A stretch of DNA of 64,000 bases, from NCBI GenBank assembly GCA_020891255.1, contig BQFW01000006.1:1-64000 (forward strand), read 5' to 3'. The stretch comes from Entomortierella parvispora E1425 (taxonomy: Eukaryota > Fungi > Mortierellomycota). The notes under the pieces are model-generated. The model did no database searches. It saw only the letters and a program-made list of their open reading frames with translations, and was not told the origin of the DNA. Position numbers and translations under genes: made by a program. Shown here piece by piece: positions 15,144 to 47,789 of this stretch (the first letter of the stretch is position 1; the number at the start of each line of letters is the position of its first letter).

Positions 15144-18000
15144 TTTTTTTTTTTTTTTTTGCAACATTTTATTTGCGATGTCGAGCCAAAGAAGTGAAGT
15201 GAGAGTCCAAACTATCTTCAACCAGAGCAAAGCCGCGTGGTCCAGAAGAACTAAGACTCCGGAACCCCGCGCAACAAATGCCACGGCTCGTCTCCGTGTA
15301 ATAAAGAAGAGTAACATGTTACAAAAAATGGATCTTCCCATCTTTTCTAATGTCGATAAGTGAACCTGGCCACGCACACAAGCCAGTAAGCGCTGGTCAG
15401 CCAACGTGGGATTATCTTGGGCTCCAGGGCAGAGGCCTTGGTGGTGGTCGGTGTTAGGCTTTCCGCATTGGCAAGTGTCCAGTGGTAAGATCGTACCAGA
15501 GGCATTGTTCCACGGTTGCCCAGTCTGGGCTTGCTTCTTCATCTTGGGGCGGATACCTTGTGTCTTCTCCCAAGCAATGGTCACTTCGCAGCGCGTCTTC
15601 CAGAGTCGAGCTAGGGCATCCCTGTCCAGACGACGAATAAACTGATGAGCAACTGCGGCCACGACAGAGCGAGGGCCTTTAATAATTGACCTCCAGGCCT
15701 CGATCAGAGCCGAATGGAGCAGTCCTTGGTAAGCAGTGACGACAGAATAAGCCGATGCCAACGGAGCTTTGAACTGTCCCTGCTCAGGGGTTGGAAGGCG
15801 GACAAGTCATGAAAAGCAGAGTAAGGTGATGCCCACAAGAGCGTGTCCGATGGTTGGTACCATTGGAGTCGTTTCGCGGCTGCAACGTTGGGTGTACGGG
15901 CTTGTTCTTGCGGTGTCTTGTGTCAGCATCCTCATTGGTTTTCCTGACGGCGGCCCTGCCCCACTTTGGTATTGAAGCCACCGCATCCTCCCATATTAGT
16001 TGTTGTTGACTGTACGAGTTTGGACAAGTCCACACATGGTCGTCGTCCTCCGGGGCTGCATGACACAGGCAGCAGAGTGCGTCTGCGTAAATATCTGGGT
16101 GTCGCGCCTGCATGACTGTGAGTGTCGGAAGTATGCCATGCAGTTTTTTGATGTGCTGTGTGCGTCGTGACGTGTCCCCTCGGCTGCTGAAGAAAGTATG
16201 GACTGGCCGTTTGTCATGGATGATCGAAAGACCAGATCGCCACTCCACATCGCTCAAGTCACTAATAGATCGCTTGACACGTTTCTGCGCTGTCCACGTT
16301 TGATGTCGACGGATGGTAGTCTGCTGCTTAAGAAATTGCCGCAAATATAACTCCAGTTGTTGACCGTGGCACGAAGCTGTGAAGGTAATGTCGTTTTGAG
16401 TGCTGAAGTCCGTATGCCATAGTGTCGTGTCCTGCTCAACAGCGTTGGTAGCGATTGCGTCAGCCATGACGTTACCCTTGTCACACTGTTTCCTCGAATC
16501 CATTGCACCGCTGTCCGGCCCTCCCGTTCTGCCACCACTGTCGCCAAAACTGCCCAGAGGCATGCATGTGACGCCCGTTGTCGCTTTCGTGGAAGTGTTT
16601 TGTGCCGGTTCAGGACTAGGTCGTTATATAGAGTGACGACGCCTTCATTATCGAGGCGGACCAAAATGTCTTGCCTTGGAGGCGTGGCCACGATCGCGGC
16701 AATAAGTCCCATAAGCTCGGCTTTGCCAGAAGAGGCTTGTCCATCTGCGCGGCCAGGGATAGAGTTAGAGGTGTCTGTGGAGAAGTCAGCCACTCCAAAG
16801 GCCATAGCGCACCCTTCAGAACCTGCTCGGACCATCGAGCCGTCCGAGTATAGGACTCGCTGATCTTGTGTGATTGGTGATTGGCGAAGCTGGTGTAAGA
16901 GTTCGGCTTGGGCTCTGGGCATCCACAGCGGGCCTACTTTGACATTGTGGTTTGGCTGTGGGAGAGGTAAAGTAGGAGGTGAAATGTGAAGAGTATGAAC
17001 AGCACTTTGATCGATGGTGACCGTAAGTGGGTGTTGGTGTAGTCCAATACGGTCTCTGTTGGTGATCACATCCTGGTCCCGCTCCTCAGTAGCCTAGGAA
17101 ATGTACTCGACTCTGATAAGCTGCCTTTCTTCTGCCGCCTTCAGGTGTTGCTGATGTTTGTTGTCTGCGTAGTCGTGTGCGTCCTCGATTTTGTGAGCAA
17201 GAGTATCTGCAATGCGTCCGAGCTGGATCTGAGCGCAAGCCTGCAAACCTCGGAGCCCCCGTTGGGCAATACTCTCGGCCGCTTTGGTGGCCTCGGCTAA
17301 CCTTTGCGGGTTCTTGGCTAGTTGACGGCGGTAACGGGCAGCATGGACCTGAAGCTCCTGACGCCTCTTGTCCACTGCAGACTGCAACTCTTATAGATCT
17401 TGGTCCGGGCAGGAATAGTGTCCACGTCGGCTGCATTAAGCCGTGAGGTCAGCTCATCGTCAAGCCAGCGTGATTCAGCTCGCAACAAGGCGTCTGCCTC
17501 CGGTGGCAGTCGCGCCAAGTACGTCGGAGGTGAGGTGTCAACGACAAAGTTGTTGTTGGCATCTATACTAGCGGAGACTGAACGCGAGACATTGGTTAAG
17601 CCGACAGTAGTTGCGGTGTCAGGGAAGAGACGGCGGATGGTAGGGGCTGCAACAAAGTAAGGTGAAATAGAAGAAAACTGAGAAGACAAAGACTGCGAAG
17701 ATAACGGTGCCGATAAGGAGGGAGAAGAAGGTGATGGTGAAAGGATAGGTGATGATGGAACGATAACTGGGAGGGGTGAAGGGGGTGAAAAGGAAGGGTC
17801 GCTTACTCCCCAAGACAATGACTAAAGAAGAAGAGAAGAAGGTGACGATGAAGAAGAAGAAGGAAGGGGGTATGGTCCCTTTTTTCTTTTTTGGCTCTTT
17901 TTTTGTTGTCTGTGCGTCCACTCTTTCTGCGCGACCGTTCTTTCCATCAACTGCTGCATCGCTCTTCCATCTTGCCTCCACCCATACCATGTGCGTGCCT
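15144..18000 (-). mobile_element. Non-LTR (LINE-like) retroelement remnant: ORF1-like piece joined to RNase H/zinc-finger 3' part with poly(A) tail
   Basis: The minus strand has AATAAA then 17 A (15160-15144). RNase H motifs YSDGS, KAELMG, VRLDN and NVMADAIA are present, as is CCLC...EDDDHVWTC. There are frameshifts and no RT or endonuclease motifs. Confidence 0.75.
15160..17069 (-). pseudogene. Frameshifted RNase H plus C-terminal zinc-finger portion of LINE ORF2
   Basis: ORFs 17069-16254, 16563-15784 and 15761-15114 join by two frameshifts. Confidence 0.7.
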
Positions 18001-42479: not shown

Positions 42480-43900
42480 AAAAAAATTGGCTGCAATATT
42501 TGATCACGCTATTTTTCTTAATACAGTGGCCTGCAGCATCATGAGGAAACGACAAACGAGGTCACGACAAACAGTGCCACGGGTTGAGAGATGGCAAGGA
42601 ATTGGAAGACAGACGGGACGCTCCATCCAACAAACAACAACCCCCCGTTTCTCCTCCCTTCGGCCTATTCTTCTTTTTTTCCACAAAAGGAACTGCACTC
42701 GCCCCCGATTCAAAAGAATAATGGTCTTGGGAGGAAAGAGGACAGGAAGAAAGAGAAGAGAGGGACGAGCAAGAGAAGAGTAGGGATAAGAGGAAGAGGA
42801 GCAAGAGAATAGGAGCAGGAGAAGGGACGGACAAGAGAGAAGAGAGCTTGCCGTCTGCTGCTGGAGTCAACGCATCCGACAGCGGAGACGAGACAGGAAC
42901 GACCCAACGATCGATCAGTCAATCCTCGTCCATGTGGGAACCAAAAAACAAACGTTTTTTTTATTTGGCGCCAGCTGCCACAGCAAAGCGCAAAGAGCGA
43001 TGCAAGGGAGAGCGAGCGCAGGCAAGTTCAAGAGAAAAGGAGAAGACATCAGCGAAAGATAGGAAGGAAAAAACGGAGAAGCAAGAAAGAAGAGAAGAGA
43101 GGGAAGAGAGGGAGTCCCGAAAAGAGAGGTGACCAAGAGAGAAAAGAGGAGACGAACAACAAGAAAGAGAAGAGAAGAGGAAAGAAGAGAGCAAAGGGAG
43201 AAGAAAGAACGATCAGTCCATGCGACCACAACCAAACCCAGGAGGTCCTTGGGGGGAGTTTTCTTCCTCCAGCAGCTGCAAACTGCTTCTCCAAGAAGTA
43301 CTCCTCCCCTGGATGGACATCTCCACCCTGATGCGGAGATAGTTGCCATAGTCAGCAGTGCAACATCTTCCAGGTCCCTTCGTTTGTTGCACCGAAGAAA
43401 GTGGACGGGGGTGGACTGGATCAACGTGTCAGAACGTGGACATTTGTCGGCGTGATTTTTTTTTGGAGCTTCCTCTGACGCTGGAGCTCAAGGGTATCTG
43501 TTTCCAATAAGTCAAGGTCGTTAGCACCCATCATCCAGCCCTGAGTGAATGCTGTAAATGGAAGAGACGAGATGGCGCCCAAGGCAGCAGACAAAGAGAG
43601 AAGGAGGGAAGGGTAAGAAAAAGATACTAGTTCAGGGACGATCAGTCACAATGGCAACAACCAACAACACACGTACCCTAGGGGATGGAAGAGAGGGAAC
43701 AGAGAGAAGTGCCAGAGGGAAGAGAAGAGGGGGGACAAGAGAGAGGACAAGAGGAAAGAGAGGAGAGGGACAACAGAGAAGAGATGGAAGAGACAAGTTC
43801 AAAAGAGACGATAAGAGTGAAGGAAGAGAAGAAACGATCAAAACTGACGAGCAAGAGGGAAGGACGTGAAAGAGCTCAGGCACGATCAGTCCATGCGATG
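42480..43900. repeat. Purine-rich composite repeat, copy 3
   Basis: CCATCCAACAAACAACAA...AAAAGAATAATGGTCTTGGGAGG and ACGATCAGTCCATGCG motifs shared with the other copies. Confidence 0.65.
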
Positions 43901-43945
43901 CGAGCGTCAAACAAACAAACGGATTTCCCTATGAATTCCTCTTCC

Positions 43946-44545
43946 TTTTTTTTTTGCAACATTTCATTTGCTATGTCGAGCCAAAGAAGGTGCGAGACCA
44001 AACTATTACAACCTGAGTAAAACCGCGTGGTCAAGACGAACTAAGACTCCGGATCCCCGTGCAACAAATGCAATGGCTCGACACCGTGTAATGAAGAAGA
44101 GTAAAATGTTACAAAAAATAGATCTTCCCCATCTTTTCTAATGTCGATAAGTGAACATGGCCACGCACACAAGCCAGTAAGCGCTGGTCGGCCAACGTGG
44201 GATTATCTTGGGCACCAGGGCAGAGGCCTTGGTGGTGGTCGGCGTTAGGCTTTCCGCATTGGCAAGTGTCCGGTAGTAATGTTGTACCAGAGGCATTGTT
44301 CCACGGTTTCCCAGTCTGGGCTTTCTTCTTCATCTTGGGGCTGATACCTTGTGTCTTCTTCCATGCAATGGTCACTTCGCAGTGCGTCTTCCAGAGCCGA
44401 TCCAAGGCATCCCTGTCCAAACGACGAATAAACTGACGAGCAACTGCGACCACGGTGGAGCGAGGGCCTTTAATAATTGGCCTCCAGGCCTCGATCAGGG
44501 CCGAATGGAGCAGTCCTTGGTAAGCCGTGACGACAGAACAAGCCG
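43946..44545 (-). mobile_element. 5'-truncated copy of the LINE 3' end, with poly(A)
   Basis: Colinear with 15144-15770, including the poly(T) run on the plus strand. Confidence 0.9.
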
Positions 44546-44549
44546 ATAC

Positions 44550-45360
44550 CGACGGAGCTTTGAGGACACCCCTCCAGCGGAACTAAGGAGACCCCTATAT
44601 CTTCTACAACCGAAAGGATTGGGACGTCCTGCTCCCAATGATGGAGTTTGCTTACAATAACTCCCAAAATCCGTCCACAGGCTTCTCCCCTTTCCGATTA
44701 AACTACGGGCATGATCCAATAATTACCCCGTCCGCACTGCTGCACCCAATCCAATCCAACACTCCCGCAGCTACCGAGTTTATTTTGCAACAACAGAGCG
44801 CCCTCACGCAAGCTCAACACGCCACCCACCAGGGACAGGAGCGGCAGAAAACACAAGCAGATAAGGCAAGACGACCATCAACCTTCAAAGTGGGCGACAT
44901 GGTGCTCCTCCACTTGTCACTCGCAGCCCGCCAAAACCGCCCAGCAGAACTGAAATATATCGGCCCATTTCAGATCAAACGCAAAGCCAACGACAACGTG
45001 TTTGAACTAGACCTTGCTTCAACTATGAACAGCACCCAGTCTTCAACACCGACCTGTTGCGCCCCTACATACCATCTCCACCTCCCTTCAATTGCACCAC
45101 AACCGACCGCCCCCCTTCCGGTCACAATCGACGATGGCGACGAAGTGTACGAAGAGTATGAGGTGGAACGGATACTGGATTACAAAATGGATTGTAAAAC
45201 ATTGAAATGGCTCATTCTCTGGAAAGGCTACACGCTCGACAACGCCACTTGGGAACCAAAACGGTCTCTCGCAAATGCCCAAGAAGCACACGCAGAGTTT
45301 GAACGCACCAGAAAACCTTTAGCCGCTTTTTTTTTTTTTTTTTTTTTTTGGATGGGAAGG
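44550..45360 (+). mobile_element. Ty3/Gypsy remnant: integrase C-terminus plus chromodomain, followed by a PPT-like tract and a probable LTR (about 45362-45790)
   Basis: WDVLLPMMEFAYNNSQNPSTGFSPF, YIGPFQI, YEVERILDY...WLILWKGY...ATWEP; GGATGGGAAGGA tract. Confidence 0.8.
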
Positions 45361-45801
45361 ATGCAAACAAATACAGTAGACCTCGAGCAACAGTCAAACC
45401 AGACTGACCGTGCAGCGCCTTCACTCACAGCGAAGCCACAAACAAAGGGCCAACTACAACCACCGCCACCATTGCCACCATTGCCACCACCACAACCTTT
45501 AGTATAAATACTTCAGAAATTTTAACATCATTCAATCTTCGTCTTCGTGCTCTTCCCTTGGCGTTTACTATTGCAGAGAATGACTTTTCGTCAAAATGAA
45601 CAGCTTATCTTCCTTTCACAAGTCACCAATCTGAATTCACGACGGTTTGCAATAGGAGCGCTGGGAACGGAGTGGAGGCAAAAAGTGCCTTTTATTCAAG
45701 TACTATTTACATACAACTATCGTATACTGTATATGGGTGGATCGCGTGTTGGAACCGTATTACCGTCATGTATATACACGGTTCATGACAACGTTCTAGT
45801 T

Positions 45802-46314
45802 TTACATGCACAATATGGCATTCCATTGCTGGGAATAAAGAATGTGGCATCGCTCGAAGTCGAAACATGCTTCGCACGATGGATTCATGTTGCCACCCCA
45901 GCCAGTAGGTAAAATGCAATGCAGTCCATAATCAGTTCTTGCATCTGGCTGAGTCCAGAACTTTGCAATAGGCGCTTTATCCTGTGGACACTGAGGGTTA
46001 TTGCCACTGTAACGTAACGGGGGTTCTCCAACTGATGCCCAAGTTCCAGATTTGCAAGAAAGTAAAAGGCCATTGGTGTCTCGACCTACCAAGCCATTTG
46101 GGGAGCAATCTTGGCCTATTTCCGCGACACCGTGGATCAGGACGAATTCACCCGTTGTGAGGCGACTGTTTGATTGCAATGTGCCACCGATAACTGTGTT
46201 GCCATTAATGTTGGCTGCAACAGGAATGTTCTCATCAGGCGGTGTCATGCTCAACTGGATTGGGATAGCGAGAGCAGGAGACGCTAGTACTAAGAATATC
46301 AGAAGTATGATCAT
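45802..46314 (-). CDS. Secreted intronless protein of 170 aa with a bacterial shufflon PilV-like segment
   Basis: Signal peptide MIILLIFLVLASPALA; NSRLTTGEFVLIHGVAEIGQDCSPNGLVGRDTNGLLLSCKSGTW; Cys-rich C-terminus; TATA-like TATATAAG about 55 bp upstream. Confidence 0.75.
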   Translation of the reverse strand: MIILLIFLVLASPALAIPIQLSMTPPDENIPVAANINGNTVIGGTLQSNSRLTTGEFVLIHGVAEIGQDCSPNGLVGRDTNGLLLSCKSGTWASVGEPPLRYSGNNPQCPQDKAPIAKFWTQPDARTDYGLHCILPTGWGGNMNPSCEACFDFERCHILYSQQWNAILCM

Positions 46315-46518
46315 GTTTGAGGATGAAGGATGCGGAGCGACTGCAAGACGGATGCGTCCCCCAAACACTTATATAGTAAAAAAAAATTGATGTATACATG
46401 GCAGTGTACTGTAAAGTATGGCCCGGGTCCTCATGATGATTGCTATAAATGGAGTCTATAGGGGCCAGAAAAGAAAGAGGTTTCGATGATTTTGAACACC
46501 TGGAAATGGAAGGTCAAA

Positions 46519-46722
46519 GGCAAAGGCAAAGGCAAAGGCAAAGGCAAAGGCAAAGGCAAAGGCAAAGGCAAAGGCAAAGGCAAAGGCAAAGGCAAAGGCA
46601 AAGGCAAAGGCAAAGGCAAAGGCAAAGGCAAAGGCAAAGGCAAAGGCAAAGGCAAAGGCAAAGGCAAAGGCAAAGGCAAAGGCAAAGGCAAAGGCAAAGG
46701 CAAAGGCAAAGGCAAAGGCAAA
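46519..46722. repeat. (GGCAAA)n microsatellite, about 34 units
   Basis: Perfect hexamer array. Confidence 0.97.
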
Positions 46723-47789
46723 GACAGAGACAAAGCTTGTCCACGTTCTCACGCTTTTTTAGCGTCCCTCTTCCACAATCCATCGGACCTCCTTATGACT
46801 CGCGCCACATTGGTCATCTTCTCCTGCATGAGAAATTACCCTTTTTTTTTCATCGGCCTGGTTTGTCTTGCGAAATTTCAAGGTTGTTGTGAAGTAGCGT
46901 TGATCAGTATCAGTTCTCATCATGGACGAGATGTCCTTGCCTTGTAACCCAGTAAGTTCTTCGTTTCTATAGCAATAGAAGATCAGCAGTACGAGCATTA
47001 AGATGACGAAGAGCGCGGTGAAGACGCGTTAAATCGCGTCGCGTCGAGGTCGCGTGTGAGTGAATAGTCATACCTTGTCCATAGAGTAAATCCCGTTGCT
47101 GCAAAGGCTTGGAACATTGCGCAGGCACCAAGGCCATGCTTTTTGATTGTGGCTGGGTCCTGGAGATGGGCCATCAGCTTGGCCATGTCCTTGTATAACA
47201 TGGGCAGACTCTGCTTGCTGGTGCCGCCTCGACTGTTCTAGTGCTTCAAGGACTTCCTCAACTTTGCGAACTGGTGTTCAAAAACAGGGCTGTCTTGCCA
47301 AAACCCAGGGCTAGTCTCCTTCCAATCGTCTCTTTTAAATCCCTTATCGTCAAAATGGCTCTTCAAGGCGCTTCGACTCCTTCGACGGTCTTGTAGGTGT
47401 ATTTCTTTGTGTCAGAGAGATATGAGATGTAGAGGTAAAGAGATGACGGCGCGCAGGCCATGACAACTTTAAACGCCTCCCTGTATTCTCCGGATAGTTC
47501 TCCTTCTTCGATTTGCTTCATGAGGAACTCATTTGTGCGTTTGACATTGCCGCTGCAGTTGGTCTTTACGGGCAGACTGGTAGAACTCATCAGTGACCTT
47601 GCTTCCTGCGTCAATTGCTTGAAAGCTGAATTGGCATCTGCTTGCTGTCTTTCTTATTTTTCTTGGTGGCGCCATTCAGGAACTGGTCAATGAGCATAGG
47701 GAGTCTTTGAGGAATGTGAGGTGTATAGTGCTATAATGTGTGGTAAGGATGAGGTGGGAAGGCTCATACTCGACTAATTTATACTTTTT

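What the first reader, a model, noticed from the sequence alone, without database searches (positions are those of the whole stretch)
45802..46314. Fungal secreted protein with a bacterial shufflon PilV adhesin-like domain (HGT candidate)
RLTTGEFVLIHGVAEIGQDCSPNGLVGRDTNGLLLSCKSGTW closely follows the motif I recall at the end of the constant region of PilV, the type IVb pilus tip adhesin of IncI shufflon plasmids and related proteobacterial pili. A variable Cys-rich C-terminal module follows, as in PilV. The gene is intronless but has a eukaryotic signal peptide and TATA box. Mortierellaceae host Burkholderiaceae endosymbionts (Mycoavidus), a plausible donor. PilV tips bind LPS, so the protein might recognise bacteria.
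Basis: partly seen in the sequence, partly recalled or inferred. Interest (0 to 1): 0.75.

Follow-up and report, generated by a model that had tools for sequence, protein, structure and literature searches.

The report
Fungal secreted copy of PilV tip
A soil fungus carries an intact, conserved gene for a small secreted protein that is the receptor-binding tip of a bacterial mating-pilus adhesin (PilV). It was captured from bacteria long ago and may let the fungus bind bacterial surfaces, but neither expression nor binding has been tested.

Summary
Window 45802-46314 (-) is an intronless 170-codon ORF of Entomortierella parvispora. It has a eukaryotic-type signal peptide and a TATA-like box.

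Residues 38-90 match the last 53 positions of Pfam Shufflon_N (E 5e-11). Residues 26-169 align with the C-terminal ~140 residues of Yersinia plasmid PilV (47.5% identity, E 5e-38). All eight Cys and the C-terminal end are conserved.

The alignment crosses the shufflon recombination site (codons C-x-S-G-x-W). The protein is therefore the end of the PilV constant region plus one frozen variable cassette. That cassette is still invertible in Yersinia.

Intact orthologues exist in three other Mortierellaceae genera, with dN/dS 0.19-0.41. The genome comes from an endobacterium-cured line, and the gene's read depth equals that of its flanks. Contamination or a chimeric assembly is therefore excluded.

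A second fungal family, in Mortierellaceae and Endogonales, has the same signal-peptide start but a different bacterial cassette. The scan had already noted another PilV-like gene elsewhere in this genome (s1-193857).

The donor is unresolved. The closest bacterial relatives are Yersiniaceae, Fukatsuia and IncI-like elements, not Mycoavidus. Binding of bacterial lipopolysaccharide is inferred, not shown. I found no paper describing this.

The parts
45802..46314 (-). Complete intronless CDS, 170 codons plus stop: the secreted PilV-tip protein. It corresponds to the 3' part of annotated EMPS_04053.
   Evidence: Orthologous intact ORFs of 170-172 aa in L009, L010 and L011.
46267..46314 (-). Predicted eukaryotic signal peptide, residues 1-16, with probable cleavage after A-L-A and before IPIQ. 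It has no counterpart in bacterial PilV.
   Evidence: Sequence. Conserved in orthologues and in the second fungal family, with P20 and I21 nearly invariant. Bacterial PilV has a prepilin N-terminus instead. No signal-peptide predictor was run.
46039..46239 (-). Residues 26-92: homologue of the end of the PilV constant region. It includes the Pfam Shufflon_N match (residues 38-90, 46045-46203) and the Cys70-Cys87 pair.
46039..46056 (-). Codons C87-K-S-G-T-W92 (TGCAAATCTGGAACTTGG). This is the positional homologue of the shufflon sfx recombination site, diverged at 3 of 15 specified bases and without an inverted partner. It marks the frozen junction between constant region and cassette.
   Evidence: An IncI1 plasmid has 5 exact sites, the first encoding C-Q-S-G-T-W in pilV. 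Yersinia has 3 sites ahead of rci. The window has this one only, and as a bare DNA motif it is not above chance.
45805..46038 (-). Residues 93-170: 'type 1' variable adhesin cassette with six Cys. It is homologous to an invertible C-terminal cassette of Yersinia-type PilV.
   Evidence: 44-52% identity to P0005, P0006 and P0008, E down to 3e-24 in a small database. Alignments. The cassette is flanked by sfx sites in L002.
46315..46445 (-). Conserved 5' flank (promoter and 5' UTR). It holds a T-run, CTATATAAG at 46368-46376, and a GGACGCATCC block conserved in all four genera.
   Evidence: blastn similarity to L009 runs to 46445. Alignment.

Best explanation
The gene is a domesticated fragment of a bacterial pilV gene. 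PilV is the tip adhesin of the thin type IVb conjugative pilus of IncI-like plasmids and related elements. A piece of DNA holding the last ~65 codons of the pilV constant region, the sfx junction and one variable cassette entered an ancestor of these Mortierellaceae. The cassette was in the orientation that happened to be expressed. The piece lost the pilin N-terminal ~300 residues and gained a eukaryotic promoter and a secretory signal peptide. It has since been kept under purifying selection. These steps are shown. Inferred: the ~15 kDa mature protein, with 8 Cys and probably four disulfides, is secreted as a free soluble domain. It cannot assemble into a pilus. It probably keeps the cassette's activity of binding a specific sugar structure on Gram-negative cell surfaces (LPS core or O-antigen), acting as a lectin that tags, agglutinates or holds bacteria at the hypha, or that masks a receptor. 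My odds: origin and domestication about 0.9; binding of bacterial surface glycan about 0.45.
For: Homology: Pfam Shufflon_N above its cut-off. 47.5% identity, E 5e-38, over residues 29-169 to annotated Yersinia PilV, ending at the same C-terminal position with all 8 Cys aligned. Direction of transfer: more than 2,500 plasmids carry full-length PilV, and 329 representative hits are almost all bacterial. The fungal protein is only the C-terminal third. Cassette nature: in Y. enterocolitica the homologous module lies between an sfx site inside pilV and inverted sfx sites ahead of the rci recombinase gene. The same Yersinia constant region occurs with four different C-termini. Integration: the gene sits on a 2.4-Mb contig from an endobacterium-cured strain. 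Its depth is 78.6 against 77.7 and 78.2 for unique flanks. A Ty3/gypsy chromodomain fragment lies 295 bp downstream of the stop codon. GC is 47.6% against 49.2% for the window. Function retained: intact ORFs in four genera, dN/dS 0.19-0.41, conserved promoter block. Known activity of PilV cassettes: they bind defined LPS sugar structures and set recipient specificity (PMC9045228 read; PMC5297154 listed, title only).
Against: There is no expression evidence, because no RNA run was listed. There is no binding evidence. The AlphaFold2 model is poor (pLDDT 58) and has no fold match. The fungal cassette sits on a very long branch (2.7 changes per site) from a tight bacterial cluster, so its specificity may have changed. 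No shared neighbouring genes were found with the three orthologous loci. Contigs of other runs with the same species label do not show the gene, which may reflect strain differences or be uninformative.
Confidence: 0.8

Rival explanations
1. The two fungal families arose from independent captures. Type 1 is this gene; type 2 carries another cassette. Under this view, related shufflon plasmids in different inversion states donated separately, rather than one capture followed by diversification inside fungi.
For: Both cassettes have their own bacterial counterparts. Type 1 matches Yersinia and Fukatsuia. Type 2 matches IncI1 and IncI2 segments at 46% identity, E 2e-19. On the 55-residue core, Mortierellaceae type 2 does not group with type 1.
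Against: Both families share a signal peptide followed by P-I-[QRH] and a similar truncation point, none of which is bacterial. On 73 residues all ten fungal rows plus one bacterial protein form one split, SH-aLRT 82. The Jimgerdemannia protein has a type-2 cassette, yet its constant end is sister to type 1, support 98/75. The AU test does not reject a single fungal clade, p 0.45.
Confidence: 0.35
2. The donor was a Burkholderiaceae-related endosymbiont (Mycoavidus) of Mortierellaceae.
For: The strain naturally hosts Mycoavidus sp. B2-EB. A few Burkholderia plasmids carry PilV homologues. Endogonales and Mortierellaceae both host endobacteria (abstracts).
Against: The cassette was found only in Yersinia species, one Pseudomonadota MAG and Candidatus Fukatsuia. 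The nearest constant region (P0016) lies in an IncI-like conjugative element with 44% GC and no named host. The pattern scan of 185,579 species genomes returned no Burkholderiaceae. That scan used only two peptide patterns.
Confidence: 0.1
3. The protein is functional but its target is not bacterial. For example, it could bind the fungus's own wall, or a plant, nematode or other fungal glycan.
For: The long branch after transfer fits a shift of ligand. There is no binding data. Many small Cys-rich secreted fungal proteins have such roles (general knowledge).
Against: The only documented ligands of PilV cassettes are bacterial surface structures. The cassette's Cys framework and many motif residues are kept unchanged.
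Confidence: 0.3
4. The gene is an artefact: bacterial contamination, a chimeric assembly or a decaying pseudogene.
For: Short-read contigs break at the neighbouring retroelement, so no short-read contig bridges the gene to its left flank. The deposited gene model is odd.
Against: The strain was cured and the assembly is long-read. Depth equals that of the flanks. Three further genera hold intact orthologues in contigs with typical eukaryotic genes. dN/dS is below 0.42. The signal peptide and promoter are eukaryotic.
Confidence: 0.02

Closest known systems
Yersinia-type shufflon PilV (annotated pilV on Y. pseudotuberculosis pYPSE1-1 and on a Y. enterocolitica MPF_I plasmid; also Yersinia ruckeri and Candidatus Fukatsuia symbiotica)
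   Same: The last ~140 residues align end to end at 40-48% identity. This covers the constant-region end, the C-x-S-G-x-W junction, the cassette with six Cys and the same C-terminus.
   Different: The fungal protein lacks the prepilin leader, the hydrophobic helix and ~300 residues of pilin body. It has a eukaryotic signal peptide instead. It has no pil operon, no rci, no second sfx site and no alternative cassettes nearby.
R64 (IncI1) and TP114 (IncI2) PilV adhesins
   Same: Same family (Shufflon_N) and the same architecture of a constant end followed by a cassette after the sfx-encoded motif. Their cassettes are the experimentally studied ligand-binding parts.
   Different: Their cassettes are not homologous to the type-1 cassette of this gene, so only the constant end aligns (35.8% identity over residues 38-155). 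Their ligands cannot be carried over to it.
Second fungal PilV-tip family ('type 2': Jimgerdemannia flammicorona RUP51098.1, Linnemannia gamsii KAK3833266.1, Mortierella sp. AM989, Haplosporangium sp. Z 27, a degenerate Endogone sp. copy)
   Same: Small intronless secreted proteins of 166-186 aa. They share the same kind of signal peptide, the P-I-[QRH] start and the constant-end motif. They are 42-47% identical to this protein over the first ~100 residues.
   Different: They carry a different C-terminal cassette, related to IncI1 and IncI2 segments. Jimgerdemannia has three copies within 7 kb.
Other bacterial-type genes reported in Mortierellaceae (bacterial-like NRPS of Mortierella alpina, bioRxiv 10.1101/2020.08.21.262279; fungal ice-nucleation protein of Podila, bioRxiv 10.64898/2025.12.15.694473; abstracts only)
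   Same: They are a precedent for bacterial-like genes working in this fungal family.
   Different: Those are whole enzymes or proteins. Here only the ligand-binding tip of a pilus adhesin was kept and converted into a secreted protein.

Membership tests
Pfam PF04917 Shufflon_N (PilV constant region) | Score above the curated gathering threshold | tested here: met
   43 bits against a cut-off of 27.5, E 5.4e-11. Only profile positions 272-324 of 324 are present.
Functional type IVb minor pilin PilV | N-terminal prepilin leader and hydrophobic alpha-1 helix for pilus assembly | tested here: not met
   The alignment with full-length PilV shows the fungal protein starting about residue 300 of PilV, with an unrelated secretory signal peptide.
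Functional type IVb minor pilin PilV | Encoded in a pil operon (PilS major pilin, ATPases, prepilin peptidase) | tested here: not met
   Bacterial loci L002, L012 and L013 show the operon. The window gene is flanked by a Ty3/gypsy fragment, a microsatellite and ORFs without Pfam hits.
Shufflon (multiple inversion system) | Several sfx sites in both orientations plus the Rci recombinase | tested here: not met
   There is one diverged site at the homologous codons, no inverted partner and no recombinase. The IncI1 plasmid has 5 exact sites and Yersinia has 3.
PilV variable adhesin cassette | C-terminal module after C-x-S-G-x-W that is homologous to a bacterial invertible cassette, with the Cys framework kept | tested here: met
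   44-52% identity to cassettes of P0005, P0006 and P0008. All six Cys are aligned and the C-terminus is the same. The cassette is flanked by sfx sites in L002.
PilV variable adhesin cassette | Binds a specific LPS or surface structure of target bacteria | not testable with these tools
   This is known for R64 and TP114 cassettes. No ligand is known for the type-1 cassette, even in Yersinia.
Bacterium-to-fungus transferred, domesticated gene | Physically part of the fungal chromosome | tested here: met
   2.4-Mb contig, cured strain with long reads, depth equal to flanks, orthologues in three other genera's assemblies.
Bacterium-to-fungus transferred, domesticated gene | Narrow eukaryotic distribution against a large bacterial family | tested here: met
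   Searches return only Mortierellaceae and Endogonales among eukaryotes. Caveat: small ORFs are often not annotated, and no fungal genome collection could be searched at DNA level.
Bacterium-to-fungus transferred, domesticated gene | Purifying selection and eukaryotic expression signals | tested here: met
   dN/dS 0.19-0.41. Conserved TATA-like promoter block and signal peptide. Transcription itself was not tested.

The most novel reading that the evidence does not exclude
One ancient capture of a pilV 3' end, possibly together with its shufflon cassettes, founded a fungal gene family in Mucoromycota. Under this reading its members fossilise different bacterial cassettes behind one shared fungal signal peptide. 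The fungi would then have a small repertoire of secreted lectins, each reading a different bacterial surface glycan. That would be an innate system for recognising bacteria, or for choosing partners, built from the device plasmids use to choose recipients.
Probability: 0.2. Interest if true: 0.85.

Novelty: new variant of a known kind. Interest (0 to 1): 0.62.

Why it matters
PilV cassettes are compact modules, honed by evolution, that let conjugative plasmids recognise particular bacterial surfaces. Finding one converted into a conserved secreted protein in fungi that live closely with bacteria suggests a directly testable molecule for how early-diverging fungi recognise, hold or fend off Gram-negative bacteria.

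It is also an unusually clean example of domain-level transfer. The break points can be read against a known recombination site.

The two fungal families, with different bacterial cassettes behind one fungal leader, raise a question that sequence data alone can answer: how were the cassettes exchanged? The free domain could also help the PilV field, which has no solved structure of the adhesin part: a sequence search and one fold search of the PDB found none.

Tried and rejected
- **NCBIfam:** no hit, even at E 10.
- **PDB by sequence:** only noise.
- **Structure:** AlphaFold2 on a 13-row alignment gave an all-beta model of low confidence (pLDDT 58, pTM 0.41). Foldseek against the PDB gave nothing below E 1. 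I draw no structural conclusion.
- **Synteny:** blastn and tblastx of the whole window against 10-kb flanks of the three orthologous loci found only the gene and ~130 bp upstream. The window flanks are transposon-rich and two of the loci are short, so this is inconclusive.
- **Word-index search with type-2 protein P0021 alone:** found only itself. An alignment query was needed.
- **Read laying:** The part beside it was laid instead. No RNA run was offered, so expression and the true 5' end remain open.
- **Host of the nearest bacterial constant region (P0016):** megablast to plasmids found only an 89-bp traI match in Yersinia plasmids.
- **Second cassette or second copy in the window:** none.
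- **sfx relic as a DNA motif:** not above chance in the window. Its meaning rests on positional homology only.
- **Rejected readings:** contamination, pseudogene, and the deposited 235-aa gene model. That model's upstream exons have no Pfam hit, no similarity in the tblastx comparison with the three orthologous loci, and it removes the conserved signal peptide.

Full report
**What is there**

Window 45802-46314 on the minus strand is a 170-codon ORF that starts with ATG and has no intron. The window belongs to Entomortierella parvispora. The deposited protein EMPS_04053 is 99% identical over the shared part and lies on a 2.4-Mb contig.

The N-terminus (M, a ten-residue hydrophobic run, then S-P-A-L-A before I-P-I-Q) reads as a secretory signal peptide. 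I judged this by eye only. A CTATATAAG motif preceded by a T-run lies about 55 nt upstream of the ATG. This block is conserved in E. beljakovae and Linnemannia zychae, and a GGACGCATCC block is conserved in all four genera.

The deposited 235-aa model replaces the signal peptide with two upstream exons. Those exons have no family hit and no similarity in the tblastx comparison with the three orthologous loci. The orthologues all begin at the signal-peptide Met.

**Homology to PilV**

- Pfam Shufflon_N matches residues 38-90 on the last 53 of its 324 positions, at 43 bits against a cut-off of 27.5.
- tblastn against 72,556 plasmids finds more than 2,500 records with pilV.
- Most of those match only the constant-end part. 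Four records match nearly the whole mature protein. The best is 47.5% identical over residues 29-169, E 5e-38. Three are Yersinia plasmids and one is a Candidatus Fukatsuia symbiotica plasmid.
- In these records the match is the very end of an annotated pilV. One of them sits in a complete thin-pilus operon followed by a site-specific recombinase.
- In the alignment all eight Cys of the fungal protein pair with Cys of PilV, and the two proteins end at the same position.

**The junction**

In an IncI1 plasmid, five exact copies of TGCCAATCCGGTACNTGG lie in both orientations between pilV and rci. The first copy encodes C-Q-S-G-T-W inside pilV. I recalled the sfx consensus from memory and confirmed it this way.

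The Yersinia enterocolitica plasmid has one such site inside pilV and two inverted ones ahead of the recombinase gene. The module that follows is therefore an invertible cassette. Database proteins from Yersinia enterocolitica and Y. ruckeri show the same constant region joined to four different C-termini.

The fungal codons C87-K-S-G-T-W92 (46039-46056) are the positional homologue of this site. They differ at three bases and have no inverted partner.

The fungal protein thus has four parts:

1. a signal peptide;
2. about ten residues of unclear origin;
3. the last ~65 residues of the constant region;
4. one cassette, frozen in place.

**It is a fungal gene under selection**

- The genome was made from an endobacterium-cured line with Nanopore and Illumina reads, giving 19 contigs (PMC8759367).
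- In the Logan contigs (assemblies of public sequencing runs) of the two runs that hold the stretch, the gene is single-copy with no differences. Its depth is 78.6, against 77.7 and 78.2 for unique flanks. Contigs break only at the neighbouring retroelement.
- The 3' neighbour is the integrase-SH3 and chromodomain end of a Ty3/gypsy element. The wider window is transposon-rich according to earlier notes of this scan.
- Intact intronless orthologues of 170-172 aa occur in E. beljakovae, Linnemannia zychae and Actinomortierella ambigua. They lie on contigs with ordinary eukaryotic genes.
- Pairwise dN/dS is 0.19-0.41. dS is lowest between the two Entomortierella species and highest to Actinomortierella.
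- Gene GC (47.6%) matches the window (49.2%).
- No shared neighbouring genes were found. This is inconclusive given the transposon-rich flanks.

**A wider fungal family**

A profile search of 1.84 billion representative proteins gave 329 hits. Apart from bacterial PilV, these include short proteins from five fungi:

- Jimgerdemannia flammicorona (Endogonales);
- Linnemannia gamsii;
- Mortierella sp. AM989;
- Mortierella sp. AD094;
- Haplosporangium sp. Z 27.

There is also a degenerate copy in Endogone sp..

These proteins share the kind of signal peptide, the P-I-[QRH] start and the constant-end motif with the window protein. They carry a different cassette, and that cassette is itself homologous to segments of IncI1 and IncI2 shufflons (46% identity, E 2e-19). 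Jimgerdemannia has three copies within 7 kb.

The scan had also noted another PilV-like gene elsewhere in this E. parvispora genome (s1-193857). I did not examine it.

**One capture or several**

- On 73 residues, all ten fungal rows and one bacterial PilV (P0016) form one split with SH-aLRT 82.
- On the conservative 55-residue core, type 1, the Jimgerdemannia protein and P0016 form a supported group (96/80). The Mortierellaceae type-2 proteins fall elsewhere without support.
- An AU test does not reject a single fungal clade, p 0.45.
- The shared non-bacterial leader favours one founding gene.
- The Jimgerdemannia protein combines a type-1-like constant end with a type-2 cassette. Constant ends and cassettes have therefore been re-assorted, either in the donors or in the fungi.

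I leave this question open.

**Donor**

The type-1 cassette was found only in several Yersinia species, one Pseudomonadota MAG and Fukatsuia. These bacterial cassettes are nearly alike. The fungal clade hangs on a branch of 2.7 changes per site, so none of them is a close donor.

The nearest constant region, P0016, lies in an IncI-like conjugative element with relaxase, NikA and TraI/DotD-type genes, 44% GC and no identifiable host. Nothing points to Mycoavidus. The scan of species genomes used only two peptide patterns, so this negative is soft.

**Mechanism**

Shown: the protein keeps the ligand-binding part of PilV and lacks everything needed for pilus assembly.

From the literature: PilV cassettes determine which recipients a plasmid mates with in liquid, and the R64 cassettes bind defined LPS sugar structures (PMC9045228). 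A PAPI-1 (Pseudomonas pathogenicity island) paper is consistent with this by its title (PMC5297154, not read).

Inferred: the fungus secretes a free, disulfide-bonded lectin-like domain that binds Gram-negative surfaces. I put this at about 0.45. The long branch allows a changed ligand, and no expression, secretion or binding data exist.

The structure model was too poor to use.

**Novelty**

UniRef already labels the deposited protein as containing a bacterial shufflon domain, so the domain hit itself is in databases. Full-text searches found no paper describing this. The searches were shufflon with Mortierella, shufflon with Mucoromycota, PilV with fungi, and PF04917.

I class it as a new variant of a known kind: a known bacterial adhesin domain in a new kingdom and a new, pilus-free secreted architecture.

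Noticed in passing
window 46515-46723: A perfect (GCAAAG)n microsatellite of about 35 units lies 200 bp upstream of the gene's ATG. It blocks read laying, and the deposited gene model places it inside an 'intron'.
   Followed up: partly
window 44638-45507 (+), repeat edge about 45540-45580: This is the 3' end of a Ty3/gypsy chromovirus (Tf2-type integrase SH3 plus chromodomain), followed by a poly-T run at about 45330-45350. Read depth shows a multi-copy repeat ending about 220-260 bp downstream of the PilV-like gene's stop codon.
   Followed up: partly
window 46759-47201 (-): The deposited model EMPS_04053 (235 aa) joins two upstream ORFs to residue 21 of the PilV-like ORF and drops the signal peptide. 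Those exons have no family hit and no similarity in the tblastx comparison with the three orthologous loci. This is probably a mis-annotation. The L. zychae model likewise splices out 27 conserved codons, and the E. beljakovae and A. ambigua models are truncated at the 3' end.
   Followed up: yes
L015 9571-10125 (+), 12761-13321 (+), about 15836-16455 (-): Jimgerdemannia flammicorona (Endogonales) has three PilV-tip genes of the type-2 kind within 7 kb. The third may have an intron or a frameshift.
   Followed up: partly
L002 6184-7039: The Yersinia enterocolitica plasmid shufflon is small. It has one sfx site in pilV, two inverted sites, and two alternative cassettes on the opposite strand just ahead of rci. 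Y. similis and a Pseudomonadota MAG carry the same type-1 cassette behind an IncI1-like constant region, so cassettes move between PilV backbones in bacteria.
   Followed up: partly
window 42500-46500, runs X3 and X5: Contigs of other public runs with the same species label cover the repeats but not the PilV-like gene at 85% likeness or more. This could be presence/absence between strains, divergence, or a filter effect.
   Followed up: no
L013 1-13668: The bacterial PilV nearest to the fungal constant end sits in an unplaced IncI-like conjugative element. The element has pilS, pilM, pilV, SLT, a zeta-toxin-like gene, relaxase, NikA and a large Eco57I/helicase gene, with 44% GC. It was seen in two unrelated sequencing runs.
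   Followed up: partly
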